Positions 1-29,890 of a stretch of DNA of 64,000 nucleotides are shown piece by piece. The number at the start of each line of letters is the position of its first letter. Within the stretch, counting starts at the first letter, position 1. The position numbers were made by a program, and so were the translations under genes. Source of the stretch: Mytilus californianus (taxonomy: Eukaryota); contig NW_026262581.1 of NCBI RefSeq assembly GCF_021869535.1, forward strand, positions 114,762,001-114,826,000, given 5' to 3'. Under the pieces are notes generated by a model, which made no database searches, was not told the DNA's origin, and saw only the letters and a list, made by a program, of their open reading frames with translations.

Positions 1-1168
1 AGGCAAATTGTTCAGGAAAAAAGTAAAATAACAAAAGTACCGAACTGCAAGGAAAATTTAAAACGGAAAGTCCTTTATCAAATGGCAGAATCAAAAACTC
101 AAACACATCAAACGAATGGAAAACAACTGTCATATTCCTGACTTGGTACAGGCATTCCCTTATGTAGAAAATGTCAGCCCTGATTTAGACAATGAAGAAA
201 CCACGCGATGAAAATTGGACGGATAACAAATCCGACTCTGAGTCTCATATATTTAACAATTATATCAAGAAAAATAAACAATGTCACAACATATACATGA
301 TATAGACAAAATACATAAGTCTCGTTTATCATTGAAAATCAAAAAATGTAAACAAAAAATAACCAAGTCTTAAATTCCAAAATAAAACAAATCTTCATGA
401 TTAAAAAGTGAACTAATATCAAATCGAAATTAATCGTCGATCAGAAGAGGAAAATATGTTCATCAACCGAAAAGAAAACCAGCTAGAAGCTTTGTGTGAG
501 ATGTTTAAGACAGAATACCACCAGAATTATTAATGCGTTATACGACCACCATATTGATTATACCCTCATTTAAACCTAAAAAGTTCACAAAATTACCAGA
601 ATGACGAAATATACAAAGAATTCATAAAATACCTAACAAAACAACAGAACCGCACATAATACATACCCGATCATTCCGGTGTGTCAATACACGAGTACAC
701 GATAAATATTCTGGTAGATTTAACAGAACTCGCATGAATGTTCTGTGAAGTCAGATAAAAATATAAGTATTTGGGCATGATTTTCCGATGGTCAGAAAAA
801 CAAATAACATATTTGGGCATGATTGTTTGATGAAATCAGATACACATATGACTTACTTGGGCATAACTGACAATTGAAACCACATAATAGTGATAATAAA
901 TTCTTTATTTAAAGAGGGTTACTCAATTAGAACTAGTTTAATTTTCAATGAGGCCCTCAAACAAAATACATGTATACAGCTAACATTCAAACATCAAAAT
1001 ACAACATATAAATGATGCCATCAAACAAAATACATGTATACAGCTAACATTCATACATATAAATTATTTGAACATGAATGTCCAATGAAATCAGATACAC
1101 GTATGAGTCATGAGAGATGCATACAGGTAACAAAAACATCAAGTTTGTGGTTAAATGATAATACTTAC

Positions 1169-1282
1169 ATAATTCACAGAATTGTCCAGTGAAGCCAGAA
1201 TAACATGTACATGAAAATCCAGTGGTACTAGCATGACATGTTCCTCCGTTTCTACATGGGAGATCAGCGCAAACTTTTGATA
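1169..1282 (-). CDS. EGF-like exon (third EGF module) of the chitin-binding/EGF modular gene
   Basis: Minus strand tctttcAG|..|GTAAGT, 114 bp, phase 1-1. Encodes SKVCADLPCRNGGTCHASTTGFSCTCYSGFTGQFCEL, a canonical 6-Cys EGF pattern (PC.NGG.C, C.C..G..G..C). Not in the ORF track. Confidence 0.88.
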
Positions 1283-2012
1283 CTGAAAGAGAACACCATC
1301 AACATTTTGTAGTATAAAGTCCTTCTTTTATTCTATTCATTCTGGTCTTCATTTCTTTTGTTTTTATGGTATTTTAACAGGAGTTAGGCATGTTTCAAAG
1401 TTCAAAGCACATCTTGCCTAAATTTTGTTCTGCCTACATACTTTCACTTTATATATATCATAGTATTCAAAACATGTATCGATAAACAGTTGACACAGAA
1501 ATATTTCTCGGCTGCGTTTAAATTTTATTGTATGATACAAATTTTGAAATTTAAATGGAAACCACTTGTGACTGCCTGTACACTTATTAAAATGAAAGGA
1601 GTGACATCCAGTCTCCCTGAAAATGGGATCTGTCAAGGCTTATACAACTACATACCAAATGTCATTGACTTATCATATAAAGTGGTTCTCCTTAAACAGG
1701 GGACATAATTACATTTTTAGACATGCACAGTATGCAAAAGTTTTAAAGTTAATAAGATAAGATAAGAAAACTTTATTTTGATTCGGCATAAGTTAAAAGA
1801 CACAACACAAGCTCTAAGGAGCTTTTGACCGAATATAAAAACATATACATAACATAAAAACAGTCTAATTTGACATATAAAACAACCTGTTATACGAAGT
1901 TAAATCTCACTTACATAGCATGCAATAAAAATTTAGCAACAAATTTAAAATGAAATAAAACATGCTAGACCAGAGCAAACAAAAGCAACATAAATAATAA
2001 ACATCTCAAGAA

Positions 2013-2997
2013 TTATCTGCAAGCAGAACATCGACATTCCAAACCATTCCAGGACTGAACAAGACTTTTAAAATGTGAAAAACTATTTTCAGTCCTGAAA
2101 TGGTTTGGAAGGCTGTTCCATAAAGTAGCAGCAGCAAATTTGAAAGATTTTTTACCGTAACGGGTTGACTTTACCTGTGGAACATCTAGAATATTTACAT
2201 ACCGGAAAGAATACTTAGATTTTTTGACACTCACCAAATTTTGTAAGCACACAGGAGCTATATTATTTATAATCTTAAAAGTTTCTAGAGCCATTGTTCT
2301 AATCCGTCTAATCTGCAAGGAGGGCACCTTAGCTTTAAGTAAGAGGTCCTCGTAGGGGCTGGTAAAATCCTCATATACAAAACGGAGTGCTCTTTCCTGC
2401 ACCTTTTCTAATTTTTTGGAATTTTTCTCAGTGCAAAAATGCCATGCCAAAGGACAAAAATTAAAATTACTAAGAATAAAGGTATGAAAAATAGTAAGTT
2501 TACTAAGTCTATCCAAAACTGAGCCCAAACGTTTTAAAACATTTAATTGCTGTGATGCCCTCCTACAGATTGAGCTGATATGAACATCAAAATTTAACTG
2601 ATAGTCAATTTCAATGCCTAATAATTTAACTGTTTTTTCACATGTAAGGTTCGAGTTTTGAATACGTATAGATGGGTTTTGTTCAAAGGTCTTTTTGCCA
2701 ACAGCCAAAACTTGAAACTTATCGGGATTTGCTTGCATTTTATTCACCCGGAACCACTCAATAAGTATTTTTGACTCAGATTCCAAAGTTGAAATTAATA
2801 AATCAAAATCTGGAGTACAGAAAGACAAAGTATTGTCATCTGCATAGTTATATAAACTTCCATTTTTAACAAAAAGAAAAATATCATTTATAAATATGTT
2901 AAACAACAATGGCCCTAGTATAGAACCCTGTGGTACGCCTTTATGGATGTCAGCCAAATCACTCAGAACATTGTTGACTTTAATTTGTTGTTTACGA
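2013..2997 (-). pseudogene. LINE ORF2 C-terminal RT part after the frameshift
   Basis: Shifted frame reads NRKQQIKVNNVLSDLADIHKGVPQGSILGPLLFNIFIND..YADD..KLLGI..WNSLP. The expected SYLSNR is shortened to S-NR, consistent with a small (about 8 nt) deletion. Confidence 0.88.
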
Positions 2998-5163
2998 TTA
3001 GGACTTTAAAAGAGCAACAGCATGGGGGGATACACCATATGCTGATAATTTATCTAGCAAGATATTGTGAGGCAGGCAGTCAAAAGCCTTAGAAAGATCC
3101 ATTAATACCGCTGCAATGTACTGGTTTTTATCGAGAGCTTCACGCCAATCTTCTAACACTCTGAGAAGTGTGGTCTGACATCCATGTCCACGTCTAAAAG
3201 CACACAAAAAAGGATTAAATATTTTATCAAAGTATTCAGTTAGTTGAATTTCATATATTTTTTCAAAGATTTTAGAAAATATGGGTAAGACACTAACTGG
3301 TCTATAGTTTGTTTTTAATAATGGGTCACTCTTTTTATGAAGGGGGGTCACTTGGGCTTCTTTAAGTTTGTCAGGGAAACAGTTATTTTCAATTGATAAA
3401 TTTACAAGAGTTGTCAGCTGTGGTGCAATATAAAATTTACAATTTTTTACTATTTTTGCTGGAATACCATCAGCTCCTGTAGCCTTCTTTATGTTTATTT
3501 TATTCAAGATTTTATTGACATTTTCGTTAGATACTTTCTTAAATTCAAAGTCAGAAACATGCTTTCTGTTACTCAAAATTTCTTTTATACTTGGGTGATT
3601 TGAGGGGTCATATACCACATCTGCTCCAATTTTGTCTGCTACTGTGGAGAAAAAATTATTAAAAACATTTGAAACTTCATTTGGACTATTTACAATTTTG
3701 TCATTTTCACACAATAAGATTTTTTGTTCTCCACAGTTCCCCTTTTTTGAGAAAAATGGTTTGACTGTTTTCCAAAACTCGCATGATTTTGACCCACCAG
3801 AGCAACGTTCTAAAAAGTATACTTTTATTGATTTTCTCTTTATCTTAGTTACCAAATTTCTTTGTTTTCTAAATTTCTCCCAATTTTTGTCACTCCGGTT
3901 TTTAGTATATTGTGAATAAAGCATTTGTTTTCTATATATGGCCCCTCTCAGTTCTTTATTCATACATGGCAGTGGTTTTCTTCTTTGACACCTAGATTTG
4001 ACAGGTGCATGTTTATTTAATATATTTTTAAAATCTTTTTCATAATCATCATAAATACTATTTAAATCTTTCTCAGTACAGTTTTCTGAAATCTTTATTT
4101 TCTGTAAATCATTTGTAAATTTGTCAATATCAAAAGTTTTGTAACTTCTATATGTTACGTCCCTGCATTTTTGTGCAGGTAAATTCCCTTTCACAACTGT
4201 AGAAATAATATTGTGACAGTCACTAACACCATTTGGACTATTTGTTGTTTTAAAACACAAATTCTTTTTACTTGTAATAATAACATCCACAAGGGATGGG
4301 TTACAACCCTTTTTAAAACATGTTGGACCTTTAACCAGTTGTGATAAGTTGAAAATATCACATATATCATGTAAAGTCTGAGATTTTTCAGCAGACAACA
4401 TATCAAAATTAAGGTCACCAAAAATAATAATATTTTCATATGACACAAAACATTTATCTAGTGATTTTGTAAAATTATCAATAAAGTCATTATTTTTCAT
4501 GGATGGAGGTTTGTATGCTCCCATAATAAGCCATTTGGCATCATTTATATAAATTTCATAGCAAATATTTTCAAGTTTATCAGATTCAAAACATTGTTTT
4601 CTACTGGAGGGAAAGTCTGATTTAATCAAGGTAAGTAAACCACCGCCGTGCTGATCTCTGTCACGCCTTTGTAATTTATAACCATCAACTTGAAATAAGT
4701 TGTCTTGGAAGGTATTGTCCAATTTCGATTCGGCGATCATCAATAAGTCAACTATATTGTCTGTGAGAAGTTCTTTTACCTCATCAAATTTGAACCTGAG
4801 ACTGTTTATGTTTACATATGCCGCAATAAAGTTCTTTGGATGCAGACGTCTGGTCTCTCTCAAATCTTGGAACAAAAGTTTGTTTACACCGGAAGTAGAG
4901 TTTGACGATAGACTGTCATTTATAGGTGCGTTTGACTCCTCGTTAAAATCAATAAAATACGAATCGCTAAAATCTGGTAAATAACATATTTTGCAGAACC
5001 AGCTGTCAGTTGAATTTCCAAGTAGTTCATATTCTTTTAAGGGTAGATTTATACATTTTAGATGAAACCACAAGTTACAATCATCACACTGGATTGCCCG
5101 TTGGTTTTTTCTGACTCCCTTCTCGCAAGTTCCACATGGAAATTTTACTGGTCCAGGATTATT
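2998..5163 (-). pseudogene. LINE ORF2 N-terminal part: PHD finger, APE endonuclease, start of RT
   Basis: The frame is open upstream of the listed start to a TAA at 5164-5166: NNPGPVKFPCGTCEKGVRKNQRAIQCDDCNLWFHLKC..WFCKIC is a C4HC3 PHD finger. It ends at a frameshift in RT (LLKS*). Confidence 0.88.
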
Positions 5164-5418
5164 TTAATGTACCATAACAGTTGCCGGACCAAAATGTATC
5201 CATGCAAAATGAGATGTGTTAGTGATAATATTACTGCACACTAAATATAAATGACCAACCATTGGTGATGAGAAGTGGTTATTTTCAATCTGACCTAATG
5301 ATATACTTTAATATGAAGACCATGCAAAAGTTTCAAAGTCAATGGACCATAACTCAGATGGTAAGGTAAAATAATCTCCATGAAAAGGTAGATCTGCCGA
5401 TGCTAGTTCAACTACATA

Positions 5419-5479
5419 TAGCCTGGGATCCTGGCCAACTGCTCGACGAAGTATTAGATTGGGTCAGGATGTCAGGCTA
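5419..5479. mobile_element. 61-bp miniature DNA transposon with TAG termini and 9-bp TSD (Academ/AcademH-like)
   Basis: TIR TAGCCTGggATCCTGgCC versus TAGCCTGacATCCTGaCC (reverse complement of the right end). Perfect direct repeat AACTACATA at 5410-5418 and 5480-5488. Confidence 0.72.
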
Positions 5480-5496
5480 AACTACATATCAAATAT

Positions 5497-6663
5497 CATT
5501 GATAGTTAATGAACTGACATACCTTGGGTTGAATTTTTCAAGAACAGGTAGCTTTATGAGTGCTAAGAAAATTTTAGTTCGAAAAGCAAATAAAGCAATG
5601 TATGAAGTATTGAAAAAGGGGAGGTTGCACAACTTGTCAGTGAAATCTCAATATGATCTATTTGATAAAATTGTGAAGCCAATCCTACTATATGGATGCG
5701 AGATTTGGGGTTTCAGTAATACTGATATTATAGAAAGAGTGCACTTAAAATTTTGTAAACTATTACTAAACCTTAAGAAGTCGACACCTAATTTTATGAT
5801 TTATGGTGAACTTGGTATTTATCCCATGTCTTTATATATACAGCTGCGTATGGTTAATTTTTGGTCAAAAATGGTAAATGGGAATGATAACAGGATTGCT
5901 AAAATATTATACAGATACATGTTCTTGAAGAATTCTGTCAACCAATTTAGGTCAGATTAGTTGAAATACGTTAAAGATACATTAGATAGATGTGGATACA
6001 GCAATATATGGTTGTCACAAGGAAATTTTAATCCTAAATGGTTGGGTATTAGTTTAAAACAAAGGTTATTTGATCAGTTTCAACAGAAATGGAGAGCAGA
6101 TATTGACTGTTCATCAAAAGGTTTGGCCTACAAATTGTTTAAACAAAAATTTGAATATGAAGAATATCTGAATATCTTAAGTGATAAAGATAGAATAACA
6201 TATTGTAGATTTAGAACGGAAACCACAAGTTACCCATCGAAACTGGTAGATGGAATAAAATTGAACGTAACTATAGATATTGTAATTTATGTCATTGTAA
6301 CGAGATTGGGGATGAATTTCATTACATTTTGCAGTGTAGTTATTTGACAAACTTTCGAGCACAATATTTGGATACTTTTTCTTGCACAGAAGTAATATAC
6401 TAAAGTTTGGAAAACTATTTCAGTTAAAATTAAAAAATAAGTTAAAAAAGCTGTGCAAATTTATCAGGGTTATAACTTTTCAAGCAAGTCTTCCTGGTTA
6501 ATCACCACTCTTCGCCACTACTGTGTTATTTTGTTTTATTTTATTTTTTCTTCTCATCTTGTCATGTGTGTTTATGTTATGTTATAACTTTTGATGAACT
6601 TCTTTGTACCATTGTAACTATATGGTGTTTGAGAAATAAAGAATCTTGAATCTTGAATCTTGA
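5497..6663 (+). mobile_element. 5'-truncated RTEX-like LINE (RT thumb plus C-terminal CCHC knuckle), disrupted
   Basis: YLGLNFSRTGSF..KPILLYGCEIWG..ERVHLKFCK..YGELG. In-frame TAG at 5958-5960. After a frameshift near 6217: NHKLPIETGRW..YCNLCHCNEIGDEFHYILQC. Tail AATAAAG(AATCTTG)3 at about 6635-6663. Clade assignment is from memory. Confidence 0.8.
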
Positions 6664-6690
6664 CTTATCATATGTGGTTTCTATACTCAC

Positions 6691-6828
6691 GTGACTGTGA
6701 TTTCAGCTCACAGTTAGGGCCGTGGTAAGAAAACCCGTCAACGTTTTGGAGACAATGGCACATGTATCCATCACTTGTTCCCGTGCAAGATCCTCCATTC
6801 AAACATGGTTTGTTTAAGCATGCATTGC
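6691..6828 (-). CDS. EGF-like exon (second EGF module)
   Basis: tttacttgatAG|..|GTGAGT, 138 bp, phase 1-1: NACLNKPCLNGGSCTGTSDGYMCHCLQNVDGFSYHGPNCELKSQS. Not in the ORF track. Confidence 0.88.
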
Positions 6829-6870
6829 CTATCAAGTAAAGAAATAAATTAATAAATTAATCGATGAAAA

Positions 6871-7447
6871 GGAGTAGGCCCAGTAAGACCCCTTTTTGGC
6901 CCCAAAATATAGCAGTTTTACAAAATTGTTAAAATGTAAAGTTTTAGCTATTTATTGGAAAGAAGAATACTTTTGTTACATAAATATGGGCTGTTTTTGA
7001 CAATACAATGCACATGTATCGGGTACTAGCATCATTAAGTCATGCTAAATTACTGAAATCTTCGAAATTTCAGCATTTTGGTTAATTTTTAGACGGTTTC
7101 CGTCTGAAATGGAAGTGGCCGCATTTGTGTTCATTCTTAATATTTAAATGTAAGTTGTATTTGATGATAATACATAACATATATAAAGGTTGAGAATGAA
7201 CACGGATGCGGCCACTTTCTTTTTTGACAAAAACCATCTGAAAAGTGACATATTATGGCATATTTGATAGATTTTTCATATTTAAGCATGAAATTGAGCG
7301 TCTTTAATGACTAAATCAGTTCAAATCTTTCACTTAAACTAATTGAATCGACTGAAGTAGACACTTAAGTGTTTAAAAAGTGTCCAAATGTTTCATCAAA
7401 TGAACCTGAATTTTGAGGCCAAAATCGGCCCTTACCGGACCTACTCC
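6871..7447. mobile_element. MITE, copy 1 of the GGAGTAGG family
   Basis: Imperfect ~37-bp TIR: GGAGTAGGCCCAGTAAGACCCC.. and ..GGCCCTTACCGGACCTACTCC. A colinear second copy lies at 33619-34202. Confidence 0.85.
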
Positions 7448-8025
7448 TTTGAATTAGTTGATAAAGGATTTTTATTATTGGTTATCATGTTGATAATTGT
7501 AATAATTGCTTATGATAATTTTACATTATTCATGATTGAAGACTAATAAATTGTTTTAATGCATTTTCAAAAAAAATCATCTGCGATTACTTAGGCTCTA
7601 CAACATTTTATATTATTTAGAAGCAATATACCCACATAAAGTACTGACATGCTATGTTCTTACTGCTTCGAGTAAAACCACCATTTTTCATTTGTGCTTA
7701 AAAGTATAAATTGAGGTTGGAAATCTGCAGAGATTATGATAGCATATTTATCTTAAAATTTCATGGCTAAAACGCTCTCAACAAATATCTGAGCAAATGT
7801 GCGTTTCTATAATAGTAACAATACATATATGCATATATCTTGCGAAATATGGTAAAATCTTTGTTTCCAAATCACTATTTGAATCCAAATTCAAACAACA
7901 AAAGGATAGAGTTCAATATAATTATTCATTTTGCATTCACGGTATTTGAATAACAGTACATCGTAAAAAATTTCTACGAAAATATAATGGTTCTTTAATA
8001 TGTTGTGACGATGATGTTCTCTTAC

Positions 8026-8157
8026 CTATCTCACAGTTTTGTCCACTGTAGGCGCTGTTACAAACACACATGTAGGTTTGTTGCGGTGGTAACGATCCTA
8101 TACAGTTTCCTCCGTTTAAGCATGGGTTTGATTTACACGGGTCGGGATCAGTTATAA
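8026..8157 (-). CDS. EGF-like exon (first EGF module)
   Basis: tttatttAG|..|GTAAGA, 132 bp, phase 1-1: ITDPDPCKSNPCLNGGNCIGSLPPQQTYMCVCNSAYSGQNCEI. Not in the ORF track. Confidence 0.9.
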
Positions 8158-8414
8158 CTAAATAAATTATAAGGATCGCAAAATATCAATGTACAGTTGA
8201 AAATATAATTTGGTACTTTAACCTTTCAAGGCGTGACAACAATAAAAAGGTAAAAACCTACTACGTTACACAGTCTTGCTGAAACAGTTGGAAAACTTGG
8301 AGTTGAGTCTATATATAAAAACAAAGGAGGATCTATGATAAGAGCTAATATCTGGCTTCTGAAATTGTAATAAAACATTAGAATTAATTTTTCCATTCAA
8401 AATCTAATTAATTT

Positions 8415-8553
8415 AATTGATAAAAGAAAGAGAGGAATGTTATATGATAATTGATAAAAGAAAGAGAGGGATGTTATATGATAATTGATAAAAGAAAGAG
8501 AGGGATGTTTTATGATAATTGATAAAAGAAAGAGAGGGATGTTATATGATAAT
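8415..8553. repeat. 34-bp tandem repeat, about 4 copies
   Basis: Unit ttgataaaagaaagagagggatgttatatgataa. Confidence 0.9.
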
Positions 8554-9754
8554 TTCAGTGTTGAATTTAGTAATTTGTGCTGTCTCTGTTATGATTTAGA
8601 TTGTCAAAGCCTCATCCCAAAAAAATATATTCAACCCTTTTCAACATTTGTGTATATATTGAAGACATTTTGTAGCATAATCTATATTGGAATAAGACTT
8701 TGGCTAAAATCTGAATTTTTAAGACAAGATCTTAAAAAAGGTTATTTGGCCGGGTCTTTTTTCAGTTCTTCATTAGATGAAATATTTTTGGAGCAAATAC
8801 ATAACACAAAATTCAAAAAATACAATTACTGTAATGGGATAGACTAATGTTGACACCTGAATGATGTTACTTGATAAAATTATAAAACTTTTTTTTATTT
8901 TCGAATCATGGGACCAAAATGGCTTATCACATCTTGAACTTCATATGAACGTTATTTGGGCAAACATATTTATTGCAAACAATTTCATTTGATTAATTGT
9001 GTGCTGTTTGCTTGAAGTCCAGTGAAAATTATGTCATGTTTATTCAGGACGAGAACAAATTAATAATAAATCTTAATACGCTTGATAAGTGGGTCAACCG
9101 GAATAAAGGCGGAGACACTGGTAGCAGGTCAAGAAGTCCTTATAAGTTCACGGAAATCAAAAAATTTTAAGAGCCTTATTAGTTCTACTGATCATCTTTT
9201 TTGATAATCTAGTAATCTTTTATTGTTTTTCGAGATCAACAAATTATCATTTTTACCCTGAAGATATACATTGTTGAGTCATCCGTTTTAAGGTCAGTCA
9301 GGTCATCTATGGATATGTCAATGATAAAGTCAAGATAACTTCATTTAAATTGACAATTAAATTGTGATCTTGTTTGTTTGAAATAATCTAACAATATTCT
9401 ACAATACTGATTTGTAGTATATTTTTGTTTTTGTAAAAGGCGACACAGATAAAACCTAAATTATACGTTTTATGTCAAAATAGAAAGAAGAGGGTTACGC
9501 GCCTTGTACTTTATTCACGTATTAAACTTATCTGACATTTATATAAATGTATTTAAAATGGGGAATGAACCATTGTTTTAAAGATATGTCTTCTTTTACC
9601 AGAAAAATAGTTACACTGGGTTATGTTTGTTAATCCGCTTCTGGAGAAACCTCTAAAAACAAATGTAACTATTTCCATCTGACAATTATCAATTTTAGAT
9701 CGAAAGGGAGAAAAAAGGGAATATGTAAAGCTATTTTTTTAATTAGTTTCTTAC

Positions 9755-9955
9755 TTTTGTCAGTCGTAAGACCACCGGCAGGCACACACACATCTGGATG
9801 ATCCAGCGACACGCATGCAAAGTCGCCATCTTTTCTGTGTCTTAGTGTATTTGGGCATCCAGGCATCGCTATGAAATTTCCATGCACACATTTCATAAAA
9901 GTACAACTGGTTTCATTAACCTCGTCTTCGGTACACTTTGGCTGGGTAAGCGGTA
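9755..9955 (-). CDS. Cys-rich exon, chitin-binding type 2 (CBM14/peritrophin-A)-like module 2
   Basis: ccttttAG|..|GTAAGA, 201 bp, phase 1-1: PLTQPKCTEDEVNETSCTFMKCVHGNFIAMPGCPNTLRHRKDGDFACVSLDHPDVCVPAGGLTTDK. Six Cys spaced x9-x4-x10-x13-x8. Paralogous to exon 14628-14813. Confidence 0.82.
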
Positions 9956-11007
9956 CTAAAAGGTTAAAAAATATACATATTAAAAATCAGGTTGTTCTTT
10001 TGTCTCATACTCAAAAATAGCACTCCAGATGTATAGTCAATGGACTATGAATATAGATATATTGAATATATAGTTATGGTAGGTTCTAACATATGATATT
10101 TACACTGCTAATACCATATGTGTTCTAAAAATGTATTATTTTCTAAGCAATATATGTGTTCTAGTAACAATGTAATGGTGCTCTAGTAAAACTGACGTTA
10201 TATGGTATAACTTTCACGTGGCTTCTAACATTGGAATAGACATTTTAAAGATCTTAATTTATGGAAGACATGTTAAGGTTGTCACATTCCTTTCATTCGT
10301 AGTCATCCTTAATCATAGTAGGCAATTGATTTTTTAACAGTAAAACAACGTGTTTATAAGGTCAAAACATAGAATACGCATGTATCCTCGGTAAAACATC
10401 GAGTTGAATAAGCATTTCGATAAAATAAGAGAATGGATTGGTCTTTAACGTCTTACCATTTCTACATGCAGTATTTACATGTCCTTTTCTTCAATTCATC
10501 TTAAATAAATTAATATACAAGTATATCAATTATCTATTTCTTTGATTTACATGCAATTATGTTGAAATGCACTATCGGTTTTATATCTAACATTTATTTT
10601 GGCTCAATTTTCAAAAGACAATACATGGCTGTTTAATTCATAAAGAAACTAAACAACGGCCTAGGTTTACGAAACCCTTTGCATGTAGTGAATTCGTCGT
10701 ATTCTCCGTTTTTGAGAGAGTGTTTCGTTGTTGCTAAAAAGTGTAGAATATATCAATAAGACGATCAAATGCCATAAGTCGGTTAAAGACCAGACAGGCC
10801 ATGGTCAAATGAAAACAAACAGAACTAACAAACAACAGTCATCAAAACACTACCCTGAAAACTAGATATTGGGCAGCACAAACCCTACCAAAATCCAGGA
10901 TGGACTCGTCGAGGATAAACAGTTACCGGTTCCGGTATTATGTTGCATTCAGTGACGTCACAATCGGGGGAAATAGGACGGAATGCGACTACGATAGGTG
11001 GAACATT

Positions 11008-11978
11008 AGGTAGCAATAAACAGTTAGGAAAAAATATTAAAATTTTCCCTCATAAATTTTACCATCCCCTTTTCATTGCCTTCTTGCAATATTAAGCTTA
11101 CTGTTTGTGTCATATATGTGCATATGTATGTAATCAGAATCTTCCATAGATTTCATATCCAGTATATGAAATGGTAAAATATAATTTCTCCTTGGTGTAT
11201 CCATGGCAACAATCTGCATTTTTTTGTTATAAAATATAGCAAAAAGGGGGGAAAAGATGTCACATATTTCCCCAAAATTTGACCAAAAGTAGAATTTCAA
11301 TCACTTCAAGTAATACCTTTTCTGAAACTGTTTACATATATCTTTCAATAAATCCAATGAAAATCATATGTCTTTCGTCTCATTTTTTTGTAAAATTGCG
11401 TCAAAAACTTCGTGTAGAAAAAAAGTGTTTGTAAACATTACATTAATTTCTGGACCGATGACCGGTCTAGCTATGAAAATACGGAGAGTCAAACAGAAAA
11501 TAGCCCATAAAACATGTAAAAAATAATCTTGATGTTCTTATAAACCACATTTGAAGGCTAAATTAGTACTCAGCTGTCTAAAAATGAATTTTATTACACA
11601 ATAATTTAATTTTGGATGTAACGCGTCTTCCGATTGGCTGACGTTGTTTTGTTTATCAGCTCATAGACATAATTTTGTCATGTGACCGTGACGTCATCAA
11701 CGTTTTTTCATGGTTTACTCCGGTTTAAAATGGAATTAAGAATTAAATTATAAGAAATGACTGTAATATTTTTTCTGTCTATTCGAAATAACATAAAAAA
11801 TGTGGTGCACACTTTTAAATAACCCGCTACGCGTGTTATTCAGTGTGCACCACATTTTTGATGTTATTTCTTCATAGACAGAAAAAATACTACAGTCATT
11901 CCTTAAATAACTTTCATATTTGAAAAATCCACCGGGGCCAAAATGCGAAACCAAACTCCTAACTGTGTATTGCTACCT
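11008..11978. mobile_element. MITE with 22-bp TIR, carrying a nested palindromic repeat
   Basis: AGGTAGCAATAAACAGTTAGGA at 11008 versus TCCTAACTGTGTATTGCTACCT ending 11978 (1 mismatch). Flanks are only TTAA-like, so the superfamily is uncertain. Confidence 0.75.
11751..11905. repeat. Long imperfect palindrome (~60-bp arms), foldback element
   Basis: taagaaatgactgtaatattttttctgtctat..tgtggtgcacact pairs with agtgtgcaccaca..atagacagaaaaaatactacagtcattcctta; inner stem aataac/gttatt. Confidence 0.88.
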
Positions 11979-12090
11979 TATAAAAATAAGAAGATGTGGT
12001 ATGGTTCACGATGAGACATCATTCCATCAGAGACCAAATTAAGTAGAAGTGACACAGATATTGTATAACTGTTAACTACAACAGGCGGGG

Positions 12091-12180
12091 CCGCTTGTAA
12101 AAGTTTCGAAGAGATGACGTCAACCATTAGTTCAATAACTTCCCTGTAAGCAGCAACCCTCTATTAAAGAAATCATGATA
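12091..12180 (-). mobile_element. Penelope-like retroelement RT C-terminal scrap
   Basis: Minus frame YHDFFNRGLLLTGKLLN*WLTSSLRNFYKR, similar to the recalled bivalve PLE motif DFLDRGLLLTRKLLNQGF..KSSLRKFYGR. A related scrap lies at 42442-42506. Confidence 0.5.
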
Positions 12181-12408
12181 GAAAAGACCTCCAATATCGT
12201 ATAACAACTGGAGGATATATACTCCATGTACAAGTGCCACTTGGATGTTTTATAGGAATAAAGCGGCAATTGACAAATATAAAACAATTCAAACGAGAAA
12301 ACTAACGACATGATTTATGTATAAAATAATGAACGAAAAACAAATATGATATACAGCAACAAACAACAACCACTAAATTACAGGCTCATTTTTGAAGTTA
12401 AGTTGATC

Positions 12409-12941
12409 AGGAATGCTCATACCCTAATATTTAATAGCCAGGGATGCTCATACCCTAATAGTTAATAGCCAGGGATGCTCATACCCTAATAGTTAATAGC
12501 CAGGGATGCTCAGACCCTAATAGTTAATAGCCAGGGATGCTCAGACCCTAATAGTTAATAGCCAGGGATGCTCAGACCCTAATAGTTAATAGCCAGGGAT
12601 GCTATACCCTAATAGTTAATAGCCAGGAATGCTCAAACCCTAATAGTTAATAGCCAGGGATGCTCAAACCCTAATAGTTGATAGCCAGGGATGCTCATAC
12701 CCTAATAGTTAATAGCCAGGGCTGCTATACCCTAATAGTTAATAGCCAGGGATGCTCAAACCCTTATAGTTAATAGCCAGGGATGCTCAAACCCTAATAG
12801 TTGATAGCCAGGGATGCTCAAACCCTAATAGTTGATAGCCAGGGATGCTCAAACCCTAATAGTTAATAGCCAGGGATGCTATACCCTAATAGTTAATAGC
12901 CAGGGATGCTCAGACCCTAATAGTTAATAGCCAGGGATGCT
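12409..12941. repeat. 31-bp minisatellite, about 17 copies
   Basis: Unit gccagggatgctca(t/g/a)accctaatagttaata; some 30-bp variants. Confidence 0.95.
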
Positions 12942-12959
12942 TATGTACTTGAATACATG

Positions 12960-14316
12960 AGGATCTATATGACTAAAGGGGCCTAAAATGATTAGCCAAA
13001 TCCATCTAAGCTGATGATGTCAGCCGTGTTGACTAATTTGTAGATCTTATTTGCAGATCATTTTTGCTAATTACAGTTTCTCTCTACCTACTATAGTTTC
13101 TGCACAAATCACAAGAATGGGTAAATATCGTCATTGGCGGTCGAGAACTTCTATAAGAGGTGATATTTGAGTTCAGTCATGTAAACTTAATTTGTAGATC
13201 TAATTTGCTTGTCATTTGTCAGTTTCTTATATCTACTAATCATGATTTCCGCACAAATCACAATAATGATTAAAAATCGTCATTGAAGGTCAAGAACTTG
13301 TGAAAGAGGTGACCTGATGATTTCAGTCATGTTGACTTATCAAAAAGTCTTACTTCGCTGGGTTTTTTTTTTGACTAACTACGTTTCTCTCATATACTAT
13401 AATTTCCGCCAAAAAACGCGAAAATGTGCAATAATCGTCATTCAAGCTTATTACTCTTACAAGAAGTCAACTGGAAATTTCGGCAATGTCAACTTATTTT
13501 GCTTATCATTTATGTTTTTCTCTCTATCTACTATAGTTTCAAACAAAAGGCAAAAACTGGTTAAAATCTTTATCAAGGACGATAAGTCATATCAGGAGTC
13601 GACTGCCAAGTTCGACATTGTTGACTTATCTGTACAATTTGTCTTGCAGATTATTTTGTTGTTTAAGTTTCTATCTATCTTCTATGTTTTCAAATTAATA
13701 GAAAAAATGCAGATTGGTAAAATCAATAGAAGCCAAAAAAGAAGGCCAAAAAATAAGTAAATGCAATATAAGTTTTGTTATCAGATATTTTTGTTTTAAG
13801 GGCAATAACTCCAATAAGTATTGAATTGTAGATTCAGGTCATTTTAACTTGTTTGTAGGTCTTTGCTTGCTGATCAATTTAAATCTTCTCTCCATCTATT
13901 GAAGTTTTCAAGATATTATTCAAAATCGCCAATAATTGTTTAAAATCATTAACTGAATGACAAAAAGTTCTTAAAAAGAGTCTTCAGACAATTTTGATTA
14001 AAATTTATAATGGTACGTCTTGACATCCGGAACGTTTCTGCAATCCCAGGAGTTCTCTTACTATAATAGTTTCAAGATAAAAGACAACATTTGTATTTTA
14101 CTTCCTTGTTCAGCCTTGGTGGCCATATTGGTTAGCAGACGGGATCAACAGGCACATATAAAGTAGATACACAAAAGTTGGTTCTAACTGACAAGGTAGT
14201 TTCACAGCAGAATTTCGGGGTTAAATTCAACGGACGACAAACAACGGAAGACGACAGACGACGAAAGCCAAGTGACGAAAGTAGATCATACTGGCACAAA
14301 GGCCCACATGACCTAA
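12960..14316 (+). mobile_element. Degenerate Helentron-associated (HINE-like) element
   Basis: Decayed internal repeats (ttgtagatct..tctctctacctactatagtttc recurs), then GACG-rich tract near 14230-14260 and a decayed terminus ccaagtgacg..ggcccacatgacctaa resembling the ends of the 44453-51043 elements. Confidence 0.4.
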
Positions 14317-14627
14317 TTGGGAATTAGATATCAAAGGAGGGAATAAAAACCATAAGTCGAAATAAGATAGACAGCACGATCGACTTTTGAAAAAACGACG
14401 AAAAGACTAACAACAGTCCACAAAATACTACACAACTAAAGATTGAGTGACAGGAACCCAACAAACTTCCGATTAACTTAGAATAAGATGTTTTGACCTC
14501 AACTATACAAAAAAAGGTTTCGTTAAATCTACAGATTGTCAATGATATTAATGTACTGAAGAAAGATAAAAAAAAATTGAAATAAGATAAAATTAAAATT
14601 TCAAAATAAAGGAGAAAACTTGCTTAC

Positions 14628-14813
14628 ATGGACTACCATCTGGCAAACAGGCATCTGGGTCCTCTATCAACACGCATGCGAAATCAGGATATTTTTGGTG
14701 CCTTTGACCAGCAGGACATCCAGGCATTTTAAGATACATCCCATGAACACATTTCATGAAATTACAGTCTCTATCTACTTTGTCTCCAACGCACAGTTGT
14801 GGTAATGGCACAC
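14628..14813 (-). CDS. Cys-rich exon, chitin-binding type 2 (CBM14)-like module 1
   Basis: ttttatataccAG|..|GTAAGC, 186 bp, phase 1-1: VPLPQLCVGDKVDRDCNFMKCVHGMYLKMPGCPAGQRHQKYPDFACVLIEDPDACLPDGSP. Cys spacing x8-x4-x10-x13-x8. Confidence 0.82.
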
Positions 14814-17314
14814 CTGGTATATAAAAACTTGATAAAAGTTGCTTCTTATTTTAACTTTTTAAATGTGCATTTTACTGATTATTTCTTCCAAAGACATTAT
14901 GGTACCTCAATAACTATGAATAGTTTTCTTAGGTTATAATCATTTTAGTCCATGTATTTGTACGCTATAAACATACTTTGTGCGCTTGAATTTCATAGTT
15001 TTTTTGCGGTCATTATTAATATTTATCTGCTCAACTTTTGGTTTAAATTTCGATCGGTTGTTTGGACTGCTCCTTGGTATCACCATTGTTCACCTGTGAA
15101 TTTGACTTTGAATGACTTCCCGACTCTAACGGATTTAAATTTTGAAAAAAAGTAGAATTCTTAAAATTTGTGATAACCAAACATTTTCTAAGGAAAATCC
15201 GTGTAAAAGTTAGGAATGTGGTCTCTCGTTGTCCTGTATATCTCAGAACGATTAGTTTAAAAAGAATTTATTTTCTCAATCTTAGCAAAATGGATGAGTA
15301 AAGTAAATCATACTTATAATACAATATACGTATATATGCCTAATTTAATTGTATGATGTGTTTAAAATGGATTATTAAATAACTAATGTTTGTCCATTCA
15401 AAATGCATAAGATATGAAAAAACAGGACATCACAATAGTAAATTTGAAATGAAAACATATTGTTAATATTGACTTTTGAATAAACTTGAAAATAGACAAC
15501 AATCTTAAACGAAGAACTTTACAAGATTGAACTAATCTGGTTGTCATGGTTTAACAACAAAATATTAATTATTTCTATGTGCGATTAAAAATTGTGTTAA
15601 AACGGATTAAAACGACACAGTAAAACAATGGTTAAAATATACATGCTGAAATATTTACCTTTTCCAAAAAATAAACATATTAAAAACGTAAGAGCTATCA
15701 TTGAAATATCCATATCAATAAATAATGTTTAACATAAAAATGCATGATCGTTTTCGTTTTGTAAACTTTCTCAGATAGACATTAAATTAGTTTTAACTGG
15801 GGGCGAAGGCTGTATGATACTAATCATTATAGGTATGCTGAAATATATAGTTATTGATTCATAAATCCGTGTTGATGTTATCATTGATGTCCAGGAGTGT
15901 ATTTGGTCTATTGTGATTCAGCAGTATGTGCACTCTTAAACTTTATAGTCCCGAAAATCTTTTAAAAATGCAAACTTAAGCAGACATCTTTAATTAATAT
16001 GAAATATCTAGGAGGGGTATTACTATTGTGTTATTTGTAACTTTTTTAAATGATAATTTCTTGATATAGTTTCAAAATTTAATATTTAAGATAGCAATTT
16101 ATCCATTTGTCAGGTGGACCTTAGTAATTCATAATCAACACTTAACGTTTAAAACAATAATAAAATCCAGAGTTATCGAGAAAAAAATGTCATCAGATGG
16201 TCGGCGCCTACGAAAATAACAACAATTAAGACAAGACAAGAAAAGACAAAGTTTTACCCTTCCTAAGTCGTGATGTGATTTAGTCTACTAGCACCATGAT
16301 GACAGTTTTTTTTTACCAAGAAGTCATTCTCACTATAATGCTATAAAAATAAATTCATGCTTATAACACGTGGATTTGTTTTTACTTTTCCAAATTGCTG
16401 AGTTTGAAGCATCAGGAGATGACATTTACTAGTAACTGCAAAACCAATCAAACGTGAAGAATGAATTCAAAAGTTGTTTTTGGAAGAAAATTGCTCCATG
16501 ACAAAAGTTACGCATTATTTGTGCTTTTATACAAACGTGAATGATTAACGTTAAAAACATCTTTACTCTAAATATAATATTCACCAATTAACTTTATTTT
16601 CTACCAATGAAAAAGCCACACGTTAATGAGAATGGACAGCAAAAAAGAAGGCTTTTAAGCAGGTCTTTAAAAGGTTTAATGGTTTCTAGATTTGTCCAAT
16701 ATCCTTTCTATCATAAAGGTTATGACAGCGATGTTCCGTGACTGAACTGAAAAGACTGCTAATAGCAATTTGATTTTTCATTGTACATTTCCTTGTATTA
16801 AATGTTTATAGAAAAGAACATCGTCTGAGTGAAAGGTTGGAAAACATTTAGATGTCAATTTCACATCAAGAGACAGTTTAATATGCATTCCTATCGATTT
16901 ATCTTCGGAGATCTGAACTTAATTGTTGGAAATCATTGCTCACGTTTAATCAAATTGATAGTGTTTGTTTCGAGTTGTTCCATACTATAATTTCTATGGA
17001 AATTGGGATACTTTTGTATTCGGTTTTCTGACTGAAACTTACAATTATGTTTGGTAAAATGATGAAGTTATCTAAATAAATGTTGGCTCCGTTCGATTTT
17101 TCTTATGCATTTATTAACTTGATGGAAAGTTTGCATGGAATAGTTCTGAATCGTATCCAACAAGCTTTATTTGAAAATATTAATTGTTGGTCTTCAAAAT
17201 TTGATTCTTTGTTAGAGTTATATATATTTTAATACTACATTTTAATCAAGTTAAAATTGAACTTTTAAGTTATATCGTATAAAACATCTTGACTTCAAGT
17301 ACTTGAAAAATCTT

Positions 17315-28884: not shown

Positions 28885-28975
28885 TCACTTAGTCTGTGAT
28901 CATTGGGCTCAGTAATAAGTCTGCAAATTTATCTTCATTTTCCGAGAACACTCGTGGTCAAGTTATATTTTGTTT

Positions 28976-29210
28976 TGTTCTAGACCATCGTATCAGCATT
29001 GTTCTCGACCATCGTATCAGCATTGTTCTCGACCATCGTATCAGCATTGTTCTCGACCATCGTATCAGCATTGTTCTCGACCATCGTATCAGCATTGTTC
29101 TCGATCATCGTATCAGCATTGTTCTCGACCATCGTATCAGCAGTGTTCTCGACCATCGTATCAGCATATTTCTCGACCATCGTATCAACATATTTCTCGT
29201 ATCAGCATTT
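28976..29210. repeat. 24-bp tandem repeat, about 9 copies
   Basis: Unit tgttctcgaccatcgtatcagcat; explains four overlapping repetitive ORFs. Confidence 0.95.
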
Positions 29211-29890
29211 TTCTCTGGATTTCCTGTATACTTATTTTCTCCAGTAAACGTTCTTATTGTGCACGGTATAAGTCTGATGAACTATCACATTGCTCTGATT
29301 ATATTGAGAAAAGATAAATAGGCAAAGATGGATAGTTATCTCATGATAAAAGACATTAACAAGTATATTATCCCCGCTATCAATCTACTTGTTAGGTTTT
29401 GCTGTTTTTAACGATATTCGTTCAGGTCTGACACAGTTTGATACTGTATTATTTCCCAAAGAAATCGAAGGGCAATATAAGTAGTTTTTTTTATAATATA
29501 ACTCGATTACGTCTCCAATAGCAAGTGCAGGTGATCTGCATGTTGTTTTATTTATTGAAGAAAAAGTTAAATGCAGAATGAAGAAAAAAAGTGTATTGAC
29601 TATATAAATCGCATCTATAATTGAACTTGAAGAGAAGGATGCAACAGATAGTGAGATATATACATATTTTGTTTTGCACCTAGTGACAGTGTGGCTAAGA
29701 ACTATATTTTTTTTCTTCAACTTTTCCTTGTCTTTATGCATCATACATCACCTACTCTTTATTCGTTTAGGCAGACTTCATATTTAAGAGCCTCTCGTGA
29801 ATAATGGTAGGACGTTGGAATTATGAATTAACTCCAAGTTACGCTTTATAGATGATGTCCTCGTAATGAGCGGTTCAAAGTTTTGATTGG

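What the first reader, a model, noticed from the sequence alone, without database searches (positions are those of the whole stretch)
1169..14813. Hidden modular extracellular gene: two chitin-binding-like modules then three EGF modules, every exon phase 1-1
Seen: five minus-strand exons with canonical AG/GT, lengths 186, 201, 132, 138 and 114 bp (all multiples of 3, all phase 1), splice into one open 257-codon frame. The three EGF exons are absent from the ORF track. The two upstream modules share FMKCVHG....MPGCP...RH.K..DFACV....PD.C, with a short x4 second spacing that is atypical for CBM14. Established: phase-1 symmetric exons are the signature of exon shuffling in extracellular proteins; CBM14 occurs in mollusc shell-matrix proteins (Pif, BMSP) and tandem EGF in mussel foot protein 2 and shell EGF-ZP proteins. 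Inference: a chitin-anchored EGF scaffold (shell, periostracum, byssus or gut matrix) with an architecture I do not recognise, able to skip modules in frame.
Basis: partly seen in the sequence, partly recalled or inferred. Interest (0 to 1): 0.75.

Follow-up and report, generated by a model that had tools for sequence, protein, structure and literature searches.

The report
Mussel secreted EGF and chitin-binding-module gene
The five exons are real and belong to a nine-exon mussel gene for a secreted protein with two odd chitin-binding-like modules, five EGF modules and three ordinary chitin-binding modules; related mussels already have it annotated but unstudied, so it is a tidy but fairly ordinary mosaic matrix gene.

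Summary
Five minus-strand exons of 186, 201, 132, 138 and 114 bp have AG/GT borders, are all phase 1 and join into an open frame.

They are part of a larger gene of about 19.4 kb with nine exons and eight phase-1 introns:
- a signal-peptide exon at window 15659-15713;
- three further exons beyond the window start: F (two EGF), G (one CBM14) and H (two CBM14, then the stop).

Exons C to F pass Pfam's EGF cut-off. G and H pass the CBM_14 cut-off.

Modules A and B get no Pfam hit. Four lines of evidence place them as a divergent CBM14 (peritrophin-A) relative:
- a profile search of 1.84 billion proteins;
- hhalign against 29 CBM14 domains from this genome;
- an AlphaFold model;
- two fold searches.

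Their cysteine spacing is shortened and most of the consensus aromatic residues are missing, so chitin binding by A/B is unproven.

The genome is Mytilus californianus. Its RefSeq model covers only 208 aa and is named "fibropellin-1-like". Full-length orthologues of 584 aa are annotated in M. edulis, M. trossulus and M. galloprovincialis. Two M. galloprovincialis isoforms skip exon D or exon F in frame.

RNA contigs confirm the G-H and E-F junctions. The A-to-E junctions rest on annotated models and on conservation (dN/dS 0.17). Tissue and function are unknown.

The parts
15659..15713 (-). Exon 1, coding part: start codon plus signal peptide (18 codons and 1 base), donor GTAAAT, phase 1. The 5' UTR and transcription start are not mapped.
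   Evidence: sequence. The peptide begins MDISMIALTFLICLFFGK, which matches the N-termini of the M. galloprovincialis, M. edulis and M. trossulus proteins. The exon is 98% identical in M. coruscus DNA.
14628..14813 (-). Exon A, 186 bp, phase 1-1: first divergent CBM14-like module with six Cys, spaced C-x8-C-x4-C-x10-C-x13-C-x8-C.
   Evidence: No Pfam hit at E<=10. Profile search, hhalign, AF2 model and fold searches point to CBM14.
9755..9955 (-). Exon B, 201 bp, phase 1-1: second divergent CBM14-like module, 53% identical to A.
   Evidence: Joined to A and C in the annotated orthologues.
8026..8157 (-). Exon C, 132 bp, phase 1-1: EGF module 1.
   Evidence: PF00008 25.0 bits against a cut-off of 21.5. 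Its 3' part and the C-D junction are in this genome's RefSeq model XP_052106170.1.
6691..6828 (-). Exon D, 138 bp, phase 1-1: EGF module 2. It is a cassette skipped in M. galloprovincialis isoform X2.
   Evidence: PF00008 24.8 bits. Exact match to XP_052106170.1. X2 lacks it.
1169..1282 (-). Exon E, 114 bp, phase 1-1: EGF module 3.
   Evidence: PF00008 32.4 bits. The E-F junction appears in a contig of run X1. Exact match to XP_052106170.1.
1..1168 (-). Start of intron E-F. The gene continues beyond the window start, in L006 (G000:C1:114752001-114762000). Exon F is L006 8992-9288 (297 bp, two EGF; a cassette skipped in isoform X3). Exon G is L006 7309-7542 (234 bp, CBM14). Exon H is L006 6286-6692 (two CBM14, stop TGA, AATAAA about 55 bp downstream).
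   Evidence: EGF 44.0 bits, CBM_14 24.7 and 40.5 bits against a cut-off of 22.1. The G-H junction appears in contigs of three runs from three studies.

Best explanation
This is one nine-exon gene of Mytilus californianus, about 19.4 kb long on the minus strand. It encodes a secreted mosaic protein of about 587 residues with no membrane anchor. The order is: signal peptide, two divergent CBM14-like modules (A, B), five non-calcium-type EGF modules (C, D, E and two in F), then three canonical CBM14/peritrophin-A modules (G and two in H). Every intron is phase 1. That lets cassette exons be left out in frame, and annotated isoforms in a sister species do this with D or F.

Inferred mechanism: the C-terminal CBM14 triplet anchors the protein to chitin. 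The EGF run acts as a disulfide-stiffened spacer whose length splicing can change. The N-terminal A/B pair belongs to a mussel-restricted offshoot of the CBM14 fold. It has lost most consensus aromatic positions and carries a conserved basic R-H-x-K patch. It would bind either chitin weakly or a second matrix partner, which would make the protein a cross-linker in a chitin-containing extracellular matrix.

Shown here: gene structure, domain identities, conservation and purifying selection, transcription in some libraries, and two junctions. Inferred only: chitin binding, the cross-linking role and the tissue.
For: Gene model:
- Exons, phases and open frame.
- All nine exons have identical lengths and AG/GT sites in M. 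coruscus DNA at 94.5-99% identity. Summed dN/dS is 0.17 (Sd 29.5, Nd 20.5).
- Full-length 584-aa proteins with the same exon order occur in M. edulis, M. trossulus and M. galloprovincialis.
- RNA contigs give a G-H joint in X1, X12 and X5 (three studies) and an E-F joint in X1.

Domains:
- PF00008 is above cut-off for C, D, E and F. PF01607 is above cut-off for G and H.

A/B as CBM14-like:
- The A+B profile searched against 1.84e9 proteins gave 7 hits. The only ones outside the family are CBM14 repeat proteins: Styela P0002 at E 1.3e-17 over 13 repeats, and P0007 at E 4e-5 with Pfam CBM_14 86.9 bits.
- Family member P0006 hits CBM_14 at 14.9 bits, E 0.029.
- hhalign against 29 CBM14 domains from this genome scored 21.4, P 2.5e-4, with C2 to C5 in register. 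Of 100 column-shuffled controls none reached it (mean 9.6, sd 2.2, max 16.0).
- The AF2 model has pLDDT 78.4 and four strands.
- Foldseek ranks 1-7 are all CBM14 structures.
- In VIA-align, 7 of the 9 chains with Z>=2, out of 48,161, are CBM14. The canonical exon-G control finds the same seven entries at Z 4.2-7.6.

Splicing: isoforms X2 (no D) and X3 (no F).
Against: - A and B get no Pfam CBM_14 hit even at E<=10, and a PDB sequence-profile search was blank.
- The fold matches are weak in absolute terms: Foldseek E>=0.6, best VIA Z 3.9. They rest on a predicted model built from only 8 sequences.
- The C1-C2 and C2-C3 spacings fall outside the usual CBM14 range. The aromatic after 'GL' and the 'CDW/Y' aromatic are replaced.
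- The CBM14 fold does not guarantee chitin binding. EHEP and Der p 23 have the fold and do not bind chitin (PMC10619976).
- The ex1-A, A-B and B-C junctions were not tested with reads here. C-D and D-E appear only in this genome's RefSeq model.
- The one raw-read RNA run of the same species (X16) had no reads on exons E to H, with 6% of the run read.
- Nothing links the protein to any tissue or proteome.
Confidence: 0.6

Rival explanations
1. The protein is a chitin-recognising immune or antimicrobial factor, like tachycitin or other secreted CBM14 lectins. On this reading it marks or agglutinates fungal or parasite chitin, and the EGF run mediates binding to haemocytes.
For: Tachycitin is among the fold matches for both module A and module G. 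The neighbouring genes include a Toll-like receptor-type ORF (note s1-342906) and a CARD adaptor (note s1-312219). Expression is low and patchy across RNA libraries.
Against: Gene neighbourhood carries little weight in animal genomes. No induction data exist. Multi-CBM14 proteins are more often structural matrix components.
Confidence: 0.15
2. The protein is a gut or digestive-fluid protein of the peritrophin or EHEP type. Its CBM14 folds would bind dietary polyphenols or xenobiotics, or line a chitinous gut structure, rather than build shell or byssus.
For: Aplysia EHEP, made of three peritrophin-A domains, is the top VIA match for module A at Z 3.9 and third for module G at Z 6.6. EHEP binds tannin and not chitin (PMC10619976). 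A/B have lost the consensus aromatic residues.
Against: EHEP has no EGF modules. The structural similarity is at fold level only, with 13-19% identity.
Confidence: 0.1
3. A and B are an independent small disulfide-rich fold. On this reading the CBM14 signals come from cysteine-rich composition and from AlphaFold bias towards common knots.
For: No Pfam hit. hhalign probability is only 43%. All fold scores are below the usual significance levels.
Against: Four independent approaches converge on the same family and on no other. Composition-preserving column shuffles never reach the real hhalign score, 0 of 100. C2 to C5 align in register.
Confidence: 0.1
4. The protein is a signalling ligand of the Notch/Delta or fibropellin kind, as the automatic names suggest. 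Its EGF repeats would engage a receptor.
For: The best non-orthologous hits of the whole protein are Delta-like and fibropellin proteins. Read from the sequence and general knowledge, four of the five EGFs carry a C2-x4-S/T-C3 motif and two carry a C1-x-S-x-P-C2 motif.
Against: Those hits cover only 24-36% of the query, which is the EGF run. Pfam found only EGF and CBM_14: no DSL/MNNL, sushi, NIDO or FN3 domain. There is no transmembrane segment.
Confidence: 0.05

Closest known systems
Annotated Mytilus orthologues: XP_071140455.1 (M. edulis) and XP_063426446.1 (M. trossulus), both named 'sushi, nidogen and EGF-like domain-containing protein 1'; LOC143051216 isoforms X1-X3 (M. galloprovincialis); CAC5409839.1 (M. 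coruscus)
   Same: Same gene, same exon order, 86-97% identical per exon, same signal peptide.
   Different: None has been studied. The automatic names are misleading. The M. coruscus model lacks exons 1 and F even though both are present in its DNA. This genome's own RefSeq model, XP_052106170.1 'fibropellin-1-like', has only 208 aa: part of C, then D, E and F, then a 10-codon alternative end.
CBM14 / peritrophin-A domain family (PF01607): tachycitin, CHIT1 CBM14, Avr4, Der p 23, Blo t 12, Aplysia EHEP
   Same: G and H are ordinary members. A and B share the six-cysteine framework, a remote profile similarity and the predicted fold.
   Different: A and B have shortened C1-C2 (x8) and C2-C3 (x4) spacings. 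They lack the 'G-x-Y-P' segment, the aromatic after 'GL' and the 'CDW/Y' aromatic. They carry a conserved R-H-x-K patch and are invisible to the Pfam model.
Pif / BMSP shell-matrix proteins (VWA + CBM14 + laminin G)
   Same: Secreted molluscan proteins that use CBM14 modules within a mosaic architecture.
   Different: No VWA or laminin-G domain is present here, and Pif/BMSP have no EGF run (Pfam; domain composition of Pif/BMSP as stated in PMC9290575).
Molluscan EGF-like shell matrix proteins (EGFL/EGF-ZP, gigasin-2-like) and mussel foot protein 2
   Same: Tandem EGF modules in secreted bivalve proteins.
   Different: According to PMC9290575 and PMC4517812, those proteins pair EGF with ZP or stand alone, and none is described with CBM14. 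No proteomic identification of this gene was found.

Membership tests
CBM14 / peritrophin-A (PF01607), modules A and B | Match to the Pfam CBM_14 model above the gathering score (22.1 bits) | tested here: not met
   No family at E<=10 for either exon. The genome-wide PF01607 scan found 117 places, including exon H, but not A or B.
CBM14 / peritrophin-A (PF01607), modules A and B | Six cysteines with the canonical spacing (about C-x13-20-C-x5-6-C-x9-19-C-x10-14-C-x4-14-C; EHEP paper: CX15CX5CX9CX12CX5-9C) | tested here: not met
   Six Cys are present, but the spacing is x8, x4, x10, x13, x8. The first two gaps are too short and the last three fit (PMC10619976).
CBM14 / peritrophin-A (PF01607), modules A and B | Detectable sequence homology to bona fide CBM14 domains | tested here: met
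   In the profile search, the only hits outside the family were CBM14 repeat proteins. hhalign gave P 2.5e-4, and 0 of 100 column shuffles reached the score. P0006 hits CBM_14 at E 0.029.
CBM14 / peritrophin-A (PF01607), modules A and B | Tachycitin-like fold | tested here: met
   This rests on a predicted model only (pLDDT 78.4). Foldseek ranks 1-7 are all CBM14. In VIA, 7 of the 9 chains with Z>=2 are CBM14, at Z 2.4-3.9. The canonical control, module G, finds the same entries at Z 4.2-7.6. Absolute scores are weak.
CBM14 / peritrophin-A (PF01607), modules A and B | Disulfide pattern C1-C3, C2-C6, C4-C5 | not testable with these tools
The pattern is as stated in PMC10619976.
CBM14 / peritrophin-A (PF01607), modules A and B | Conserved aromatic positions of the consensus, and actual chitin binding | tested here: not met
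   In the hhalign register only the F between C2 and C3 is kept. 'GL-x-W/F' becomes GQRH (A) or TLRH (B), and 'CD-W/Y' becomes CVL or CVS. Binding itself cannot be tested here.
CBM14 / peritrophin-A (PF01607), modules in exons G and H | Pfam model above the gathering score | tested here: met
   G scores 24.7 bits over profile positions 1-53. H scores 40.5 bits in two stretches. The G model matches Avr4 at Z 7.6.
EGF-like domain (PF00008), exons C, D, E and F | Pfam model above the gathering score (21.5 bits) and the six-Cys EGF pattern | tested here: met
   Scores are 25.0, 24.8 and 32.4 bits, and 44.0 bits for the two EGFs in F. The regular-expression scan found exactly these five. EGF_CA scored only 13 bits, so they are not the calcium-binding type.
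SNED1 (sushi, nidogen and EGF-like domain protein), the automatic name of the orthologues | NIDO, sushi/CCP and FN3 domains beside the EGF repeats | tested here: not met
   The Pfam scan of orthologue P0008 and of every exon gives only EGF-type families and CBM_14.
Pif / BMSP | VWA and laminin-G domains flanking the chitin-binding modules | tested here: not met
   There is no VWA or LamG hit.

The most novel reading that the evidence does not exclude
Modules A and B, with the single-module relatives found on unassigned environmental contigs, would form a mussel-restricted domain family derived from CBM14. On this reading the family has given up chitin binding and uses its conserved basic R-H-x-K surface for a different partner, such as an acidic polysaccharide, a phenolic or DOPA-rich protein, or mineral. 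The protein would then bridge chitin, held by its C-terminal CBM14 triplet, to that second component, with splicing setting the bridge length.
Probability: 0.2. Interest if true: 0.5.

Novelty: new member of a known kind. Interest (0 to 1): 0.3.

Why it matters
The practical gain is small. It corrects a truncated and misnamed gene model in the M. californianus reference annotation. It also shows that the 'SNED1' and 'fibropellin' names on the orthologues are artefacts of EGF similarity.

It defines a divergent CBM14-like module that Pfam does not detect and that so far appears only in mussels and a few unassigned contigs.

If the protein proves to be a component of shell, periostracum, byssus or gut matrix, the mix of canonical and degenerate chitin-binding modules, with a spacer whose length splicing can change, would make a neat model for how matrix cross-linkers are tuned. 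Mosaic phase-1 extracellular genes are textbook biology, so a specialist would not be surprised.

Tried and rejected
- Word-index protein search with module B alone was blank. Its length window is only 36-115 aa, so this says little.
- ESM Atlas look-up of module A gave no usable hit.
- PDB sequence search with the A-type profile gave no hit at E<=10.
- Full-text paper search for the orthologues' accessions gave 0 papers. Supplementary files were not searched.
- Shell-proteome papers and the EGF shell-protein evolution paper do not describe an EGF plus CBM14 protein.
- A word-index search with the C-terminal CBM14 triplet (region 372-584 of P0062) found only Mytilus orthologues. No orthologue outside mussels was seen at that sensitivity.
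- The raw-read RNA run X16 of the same species gave nothing on exons E to H.
- The Logan cluster members P0066-P0070 turned out to be genomic ORFs reading into introns, not transcripts, so they give no junction evidence.
- I considered SVWC, TIL, antistasin or other small Cys-rich folds for A/B and rejected them. None appears among the sequence or fold matches.
- I rejected SNED1, fibropellin and Delta as families (see the membership test).
Exons were searched one by one by reference. The five exons were concatenated once inside a script, only to count stop codons.
Full report
**Observation**

The window is AT-rich eukaryotic DNA (about 32% GC). It lies at G000:C1:114762001-114826000 of a 1.65-Gb assembly.

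| Exon | Window coordinates | Length |
|---|---|---|
| A | 14628-14813 | 186 bp |
| B | 9755-9955 | 201 bp |
| C | 8026-8157 | 132 bp |
| D | 6691-6828 | 138 bp |
| E | 1169-1282 | 114 bp |

Each follows a pyrimidine-rich tract ending in AG and is followed by GTAAG or GTGAG. In each exon only the frame at offset 2 is open, which is phase 1 at both ends. When the five are concatenated that frame has no stop, while the other two frames have 14 and 20. That concatenation was done once inside a script, only to count stops.

**The gene is larger than the finding**

- A scan for the EGF cysteine pattern found two more EGF modules just beyond the window start.
- Reading that flank (L006 = G000:C1:114752001-114762000) gave three further exons:
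  - F, L006 8992-9288, 297 bp, with two EGFs;
  - G, L006 7309-7542, 234 bp;
  - H, L006 6286-6692, which ends in TGA, with an AATAAA about 55 bp downstream.
- All three continue the phase-1 pattern.
- Upstream, the N-terminus of the M. galloprovincialis orthologue pointed to a signal-peptide exon at window 15659-15713. It has an ATG, 18 codons plus one base, and donor GTAAAT.
- The gene therefore has nine exons and eight phase-1 introns. It spans about 19.4 kb and encodes about 587 residues. There is no hydrophobic segment after the signal peptide.
- The next gene downstream is a Toll-like-receptor-type ORF on the other strand.

**Domain identities**

- Pfam places C, D and E in PF00008 at 25.0, 24.8 and 32.4 bits, against a cut-off of 21.5.
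- F scores 44.0 bits for two EGFs. G scores 24.7 bits for CBM_14 over the whole profile. H scores 40.5 bits for two CBM_14 stretches, against a cut-off of 22.1.
- EGF_CA reaches only 13 bits, so these are not calcium-binding EGFs.

**What A and B are**

A and B are 53% identical. They are the only copies found in the genome and have no Pfam match at E<=10. The evidence that they are divergent CBM14 relatives is as follows.

1. *Profile search.* A profile of A+B searched against 1.84 billion representative proteins gave only seven hits.
   - One is the Mytilus orthologue.
   - Four are short ORFs with one A-type module each, on small environmental or run-assembly contigs.
   - Two lie outside the family, and both are CBM14 repeat proteins. 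One is a Styela protein with about 17 CBM14 repeats and a VWA region (E 1.3e-17, summed over 13 repeats). The other is a two-CBM14 protein (E 4e-5; Pfam CBM_14 86.9 bits).
2. *Weak Pfam link.* One A-type relative, P0006, touches the Pfam CBM_14 model at 14.9 bits, E 0.029.
3. *hhalign.* I took 29 CBM14 domains from this genome by a PF01607 scan, so they were not selected by similarity to A/B.
   - An 11-sequence A-type alignment scored 21.4 against them, P 2.5e-4, over 35 columns, with C2, C3, C4 and C5 in register.
   - One hundred column-shuffled versions of the CBM14 alignment averaged 9.6 (sd 2.2, max 16.0). The reversed alignment scored 10.8.
4. *Predicted fold.* An AlphaFold2 model of A from an 8-sequence alignment reached pLDDT 78.4 with four short strands.
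   - Foldseek against the PDB gave no significant E-value. Even so, its first seven ranks are all CBM14 structures: chitotriosidase, Aplysia EHEP, tachycitin, Der p 23 and the CHIT1 CBM14.
   - The Foldseek-independent VIA-align scan of 48,161 chains found only nine with Z>=2. Seven of them are CBM14 proteins, at Z 2.4-3.9.
5. *Calibration.* A model of the canonical module G (pLDDT 76.7) found the same seven entries at Z 4.2-7.6.

They are not ordinary members:

- The spacing is x8, x4, x10, x13, x8, against x13, x5, x9, x12, x6-7 in the CBM14 domains of this genome.
- In the hhalign register the aromatic after 'GL' becomes His, and the 'CDW/Y' aromatic is lost.
- A conserved R-H-x-K patch appears in its place.
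- The fold does not guarantee chitin binding. EHEP and Der p 23 have it and do not bind chitin (PMC10619976).

**Is it one transcribed gene?**

- *Annotated orthologues.* Cluster look-ups show full-length 584-aa proteins with the same exon order in M. edulis (XP_071140455.1), M. trossulus (XP_063426446.1) and M. galloprovincialis (LOC143051216 isoform X1). M. coruscus has a 464-aa model.
- *Species and local annotation.* The cluster also holds XP_052106170.1, 'fibropellin-1-like [Mytilus californianus]', 208 aa. Its contig length, 142,435,203, equals that of G000:C1, and its D, E and F segments match the window's translation exactly. This identifies the genome as M. californianus. It also shows that the local RefSeq model is a fragment.
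  - It starts at an internal Met in exon C and joins C-D-E-F.
  - It ends in a 10-codon alternative exon, which uses an acceptor about 135 nt upstream of exon G (L006 about 7648-7677).
- Exons 1, A, B, G and H are not in that model.
- *Conservation.* In M. coruscus genomic DNA all nine exons are present with identical lengths, conserved AG/GT sites and 94.5-99% identity. This includes exons 1 and F, which the M. coruscus gene model missed. Counts made exon by exon give Sd 29.5 over 355 synonymous sites and Nd 20.5 over 1382 nonsynonymous sites, so dN/dS is 0.17. Exon A is the least constrained (Nd 7, Sd 3).
  - Contigs of three runs from three studies join H to G exactly at the predicted borders. 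One of these runs is on record as RNA-seq.
  - One contig of X1 joins F to E at the predicted borders and carries a synonymous difference.
  - No contig bridged F-G or E-G.
  - The raw-read RNA run of the same species, X16, had no reads on these exons, with 6% of the run read.
  - Depths were low, at 4-9.
- *What remains untested.* The ex1-A, A-B and B-C junctions were not tested by reads. They rest on the orthologous models and on conservation. C-D, D-E and E-F are in this genome's own RefSeq model.

**Distribution**

- An 8.4-kb environmental contig (L009), reached through P0006, carries three A-type modules followed by two EGF exons. The second EGF ends in CELQSQS, like exon D here.
- The module order is therefore conserved in a more distant, unidentified organism. 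Its exon D counterpart is, by my eye, roughly 55% identical to ours.
- On that contig two of the modules are preceded in the same open frame by a Met and a hydrophobic stretch. P0004 and P0005 show the same feature.
- A word-index search with the C-terminal CBM14 triplet found only Mytilus proteins.
- At the sensitivity available, the gene looks restricted to mussels.

**Function**

Nothing in the literature I could search mentions the gene or its accessions. The shell-proteome and EGF shell-protein papers describe EGF-ZP, gigasin-like and BMSP-like proteins, but no EGF plus CBM14 protein.

My best reading is a secreted, multivalent protein of a chitin-containing matrix:
- It is anchored by the three canonical CBM14 modules.
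- The EGF run is a spacer whose length can be changed by skipping D or F.
- The degenerate A/B pair is a second, weaker or different binding end.

The rival readings are an immune chitin sensor, a gut or xenobiotic-binding peritrophin-like protein, an unrelated Cys-rich fold for A/B, and a Notch-type ligand. The automatic names 'SNED1' and 'fibropellin-1-like' fail their own domain requirements.

**Verdict**

The gene is a new, uncharacterised member of a known kind of mosaic extracellular protein. It is already present in public annotations of sister species, truncated in this one, and carries a modestly novel CBM14-derived module. Interest is low to moderate.

Noticed in passing
window 2013-5073 (minus strand): A non-LTR retrotransposon sits in intron D-E, on the same strand as the gene. 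One ORF (2998-5073) has an endonuclease plus the start of RVT_1; a second (2013-2957) holds the rest of RVT_1. A break near 2957-2998 separates them. The same intron is 5.4 kb here and about 1.6 kb in M. coruscus, so the element looks like a lineage-specific insertion.
   Followed up: partly
L006 about 7648-7677 (G000:C1, about 2.3 kb before the window start), minus strand: An alternative acceptor about 135 nt upstream of exon G adds 10 codons and a stop. The M. californianus RefSeq model XP_052106170.1 uses it. If real, that isoform would lack all three canonical CBM14 modules.
   Followed up: partly
L043 3895-4073 (G000:C1:114761995-114762173, intron E-F, straddling the window start): A short repeat of about 180 bp is covered at very high depth in every RNA and contig run, with many variant letters and loose ends. 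It is probably an abundant transcribed SINE-like element.
   Followed up: no
L006 119-1921 (+), about 8-10 kb before the window start: A 600-aa ORF has leucine-rich-repeat-like and TIR-like sequence. It is the neighbouring Toll-like-receptor-type gene on the opposite strand, in line with note s1-342906. No Pfam scan was run on it.
   Followed up: no
L009 193-444 and 3110-3436 (environmental contig); P0004, P0005: In the distant relative, A-type modules are preceded in the same open frame by a Met and a hydrophobic signal-like stretch. In Mytilus the signal peptide has its own exon. This could mean tandem genes, alternative first exons, or small single-module secreted proteins.
   Followed up: no
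window 28896-29321: A tandem repeat gives long repetitive ORFs on both strands (units such as 'LDHRISIV'). It lies between this gene and the GPCR gene at 30840-32018.
   Followed up: no
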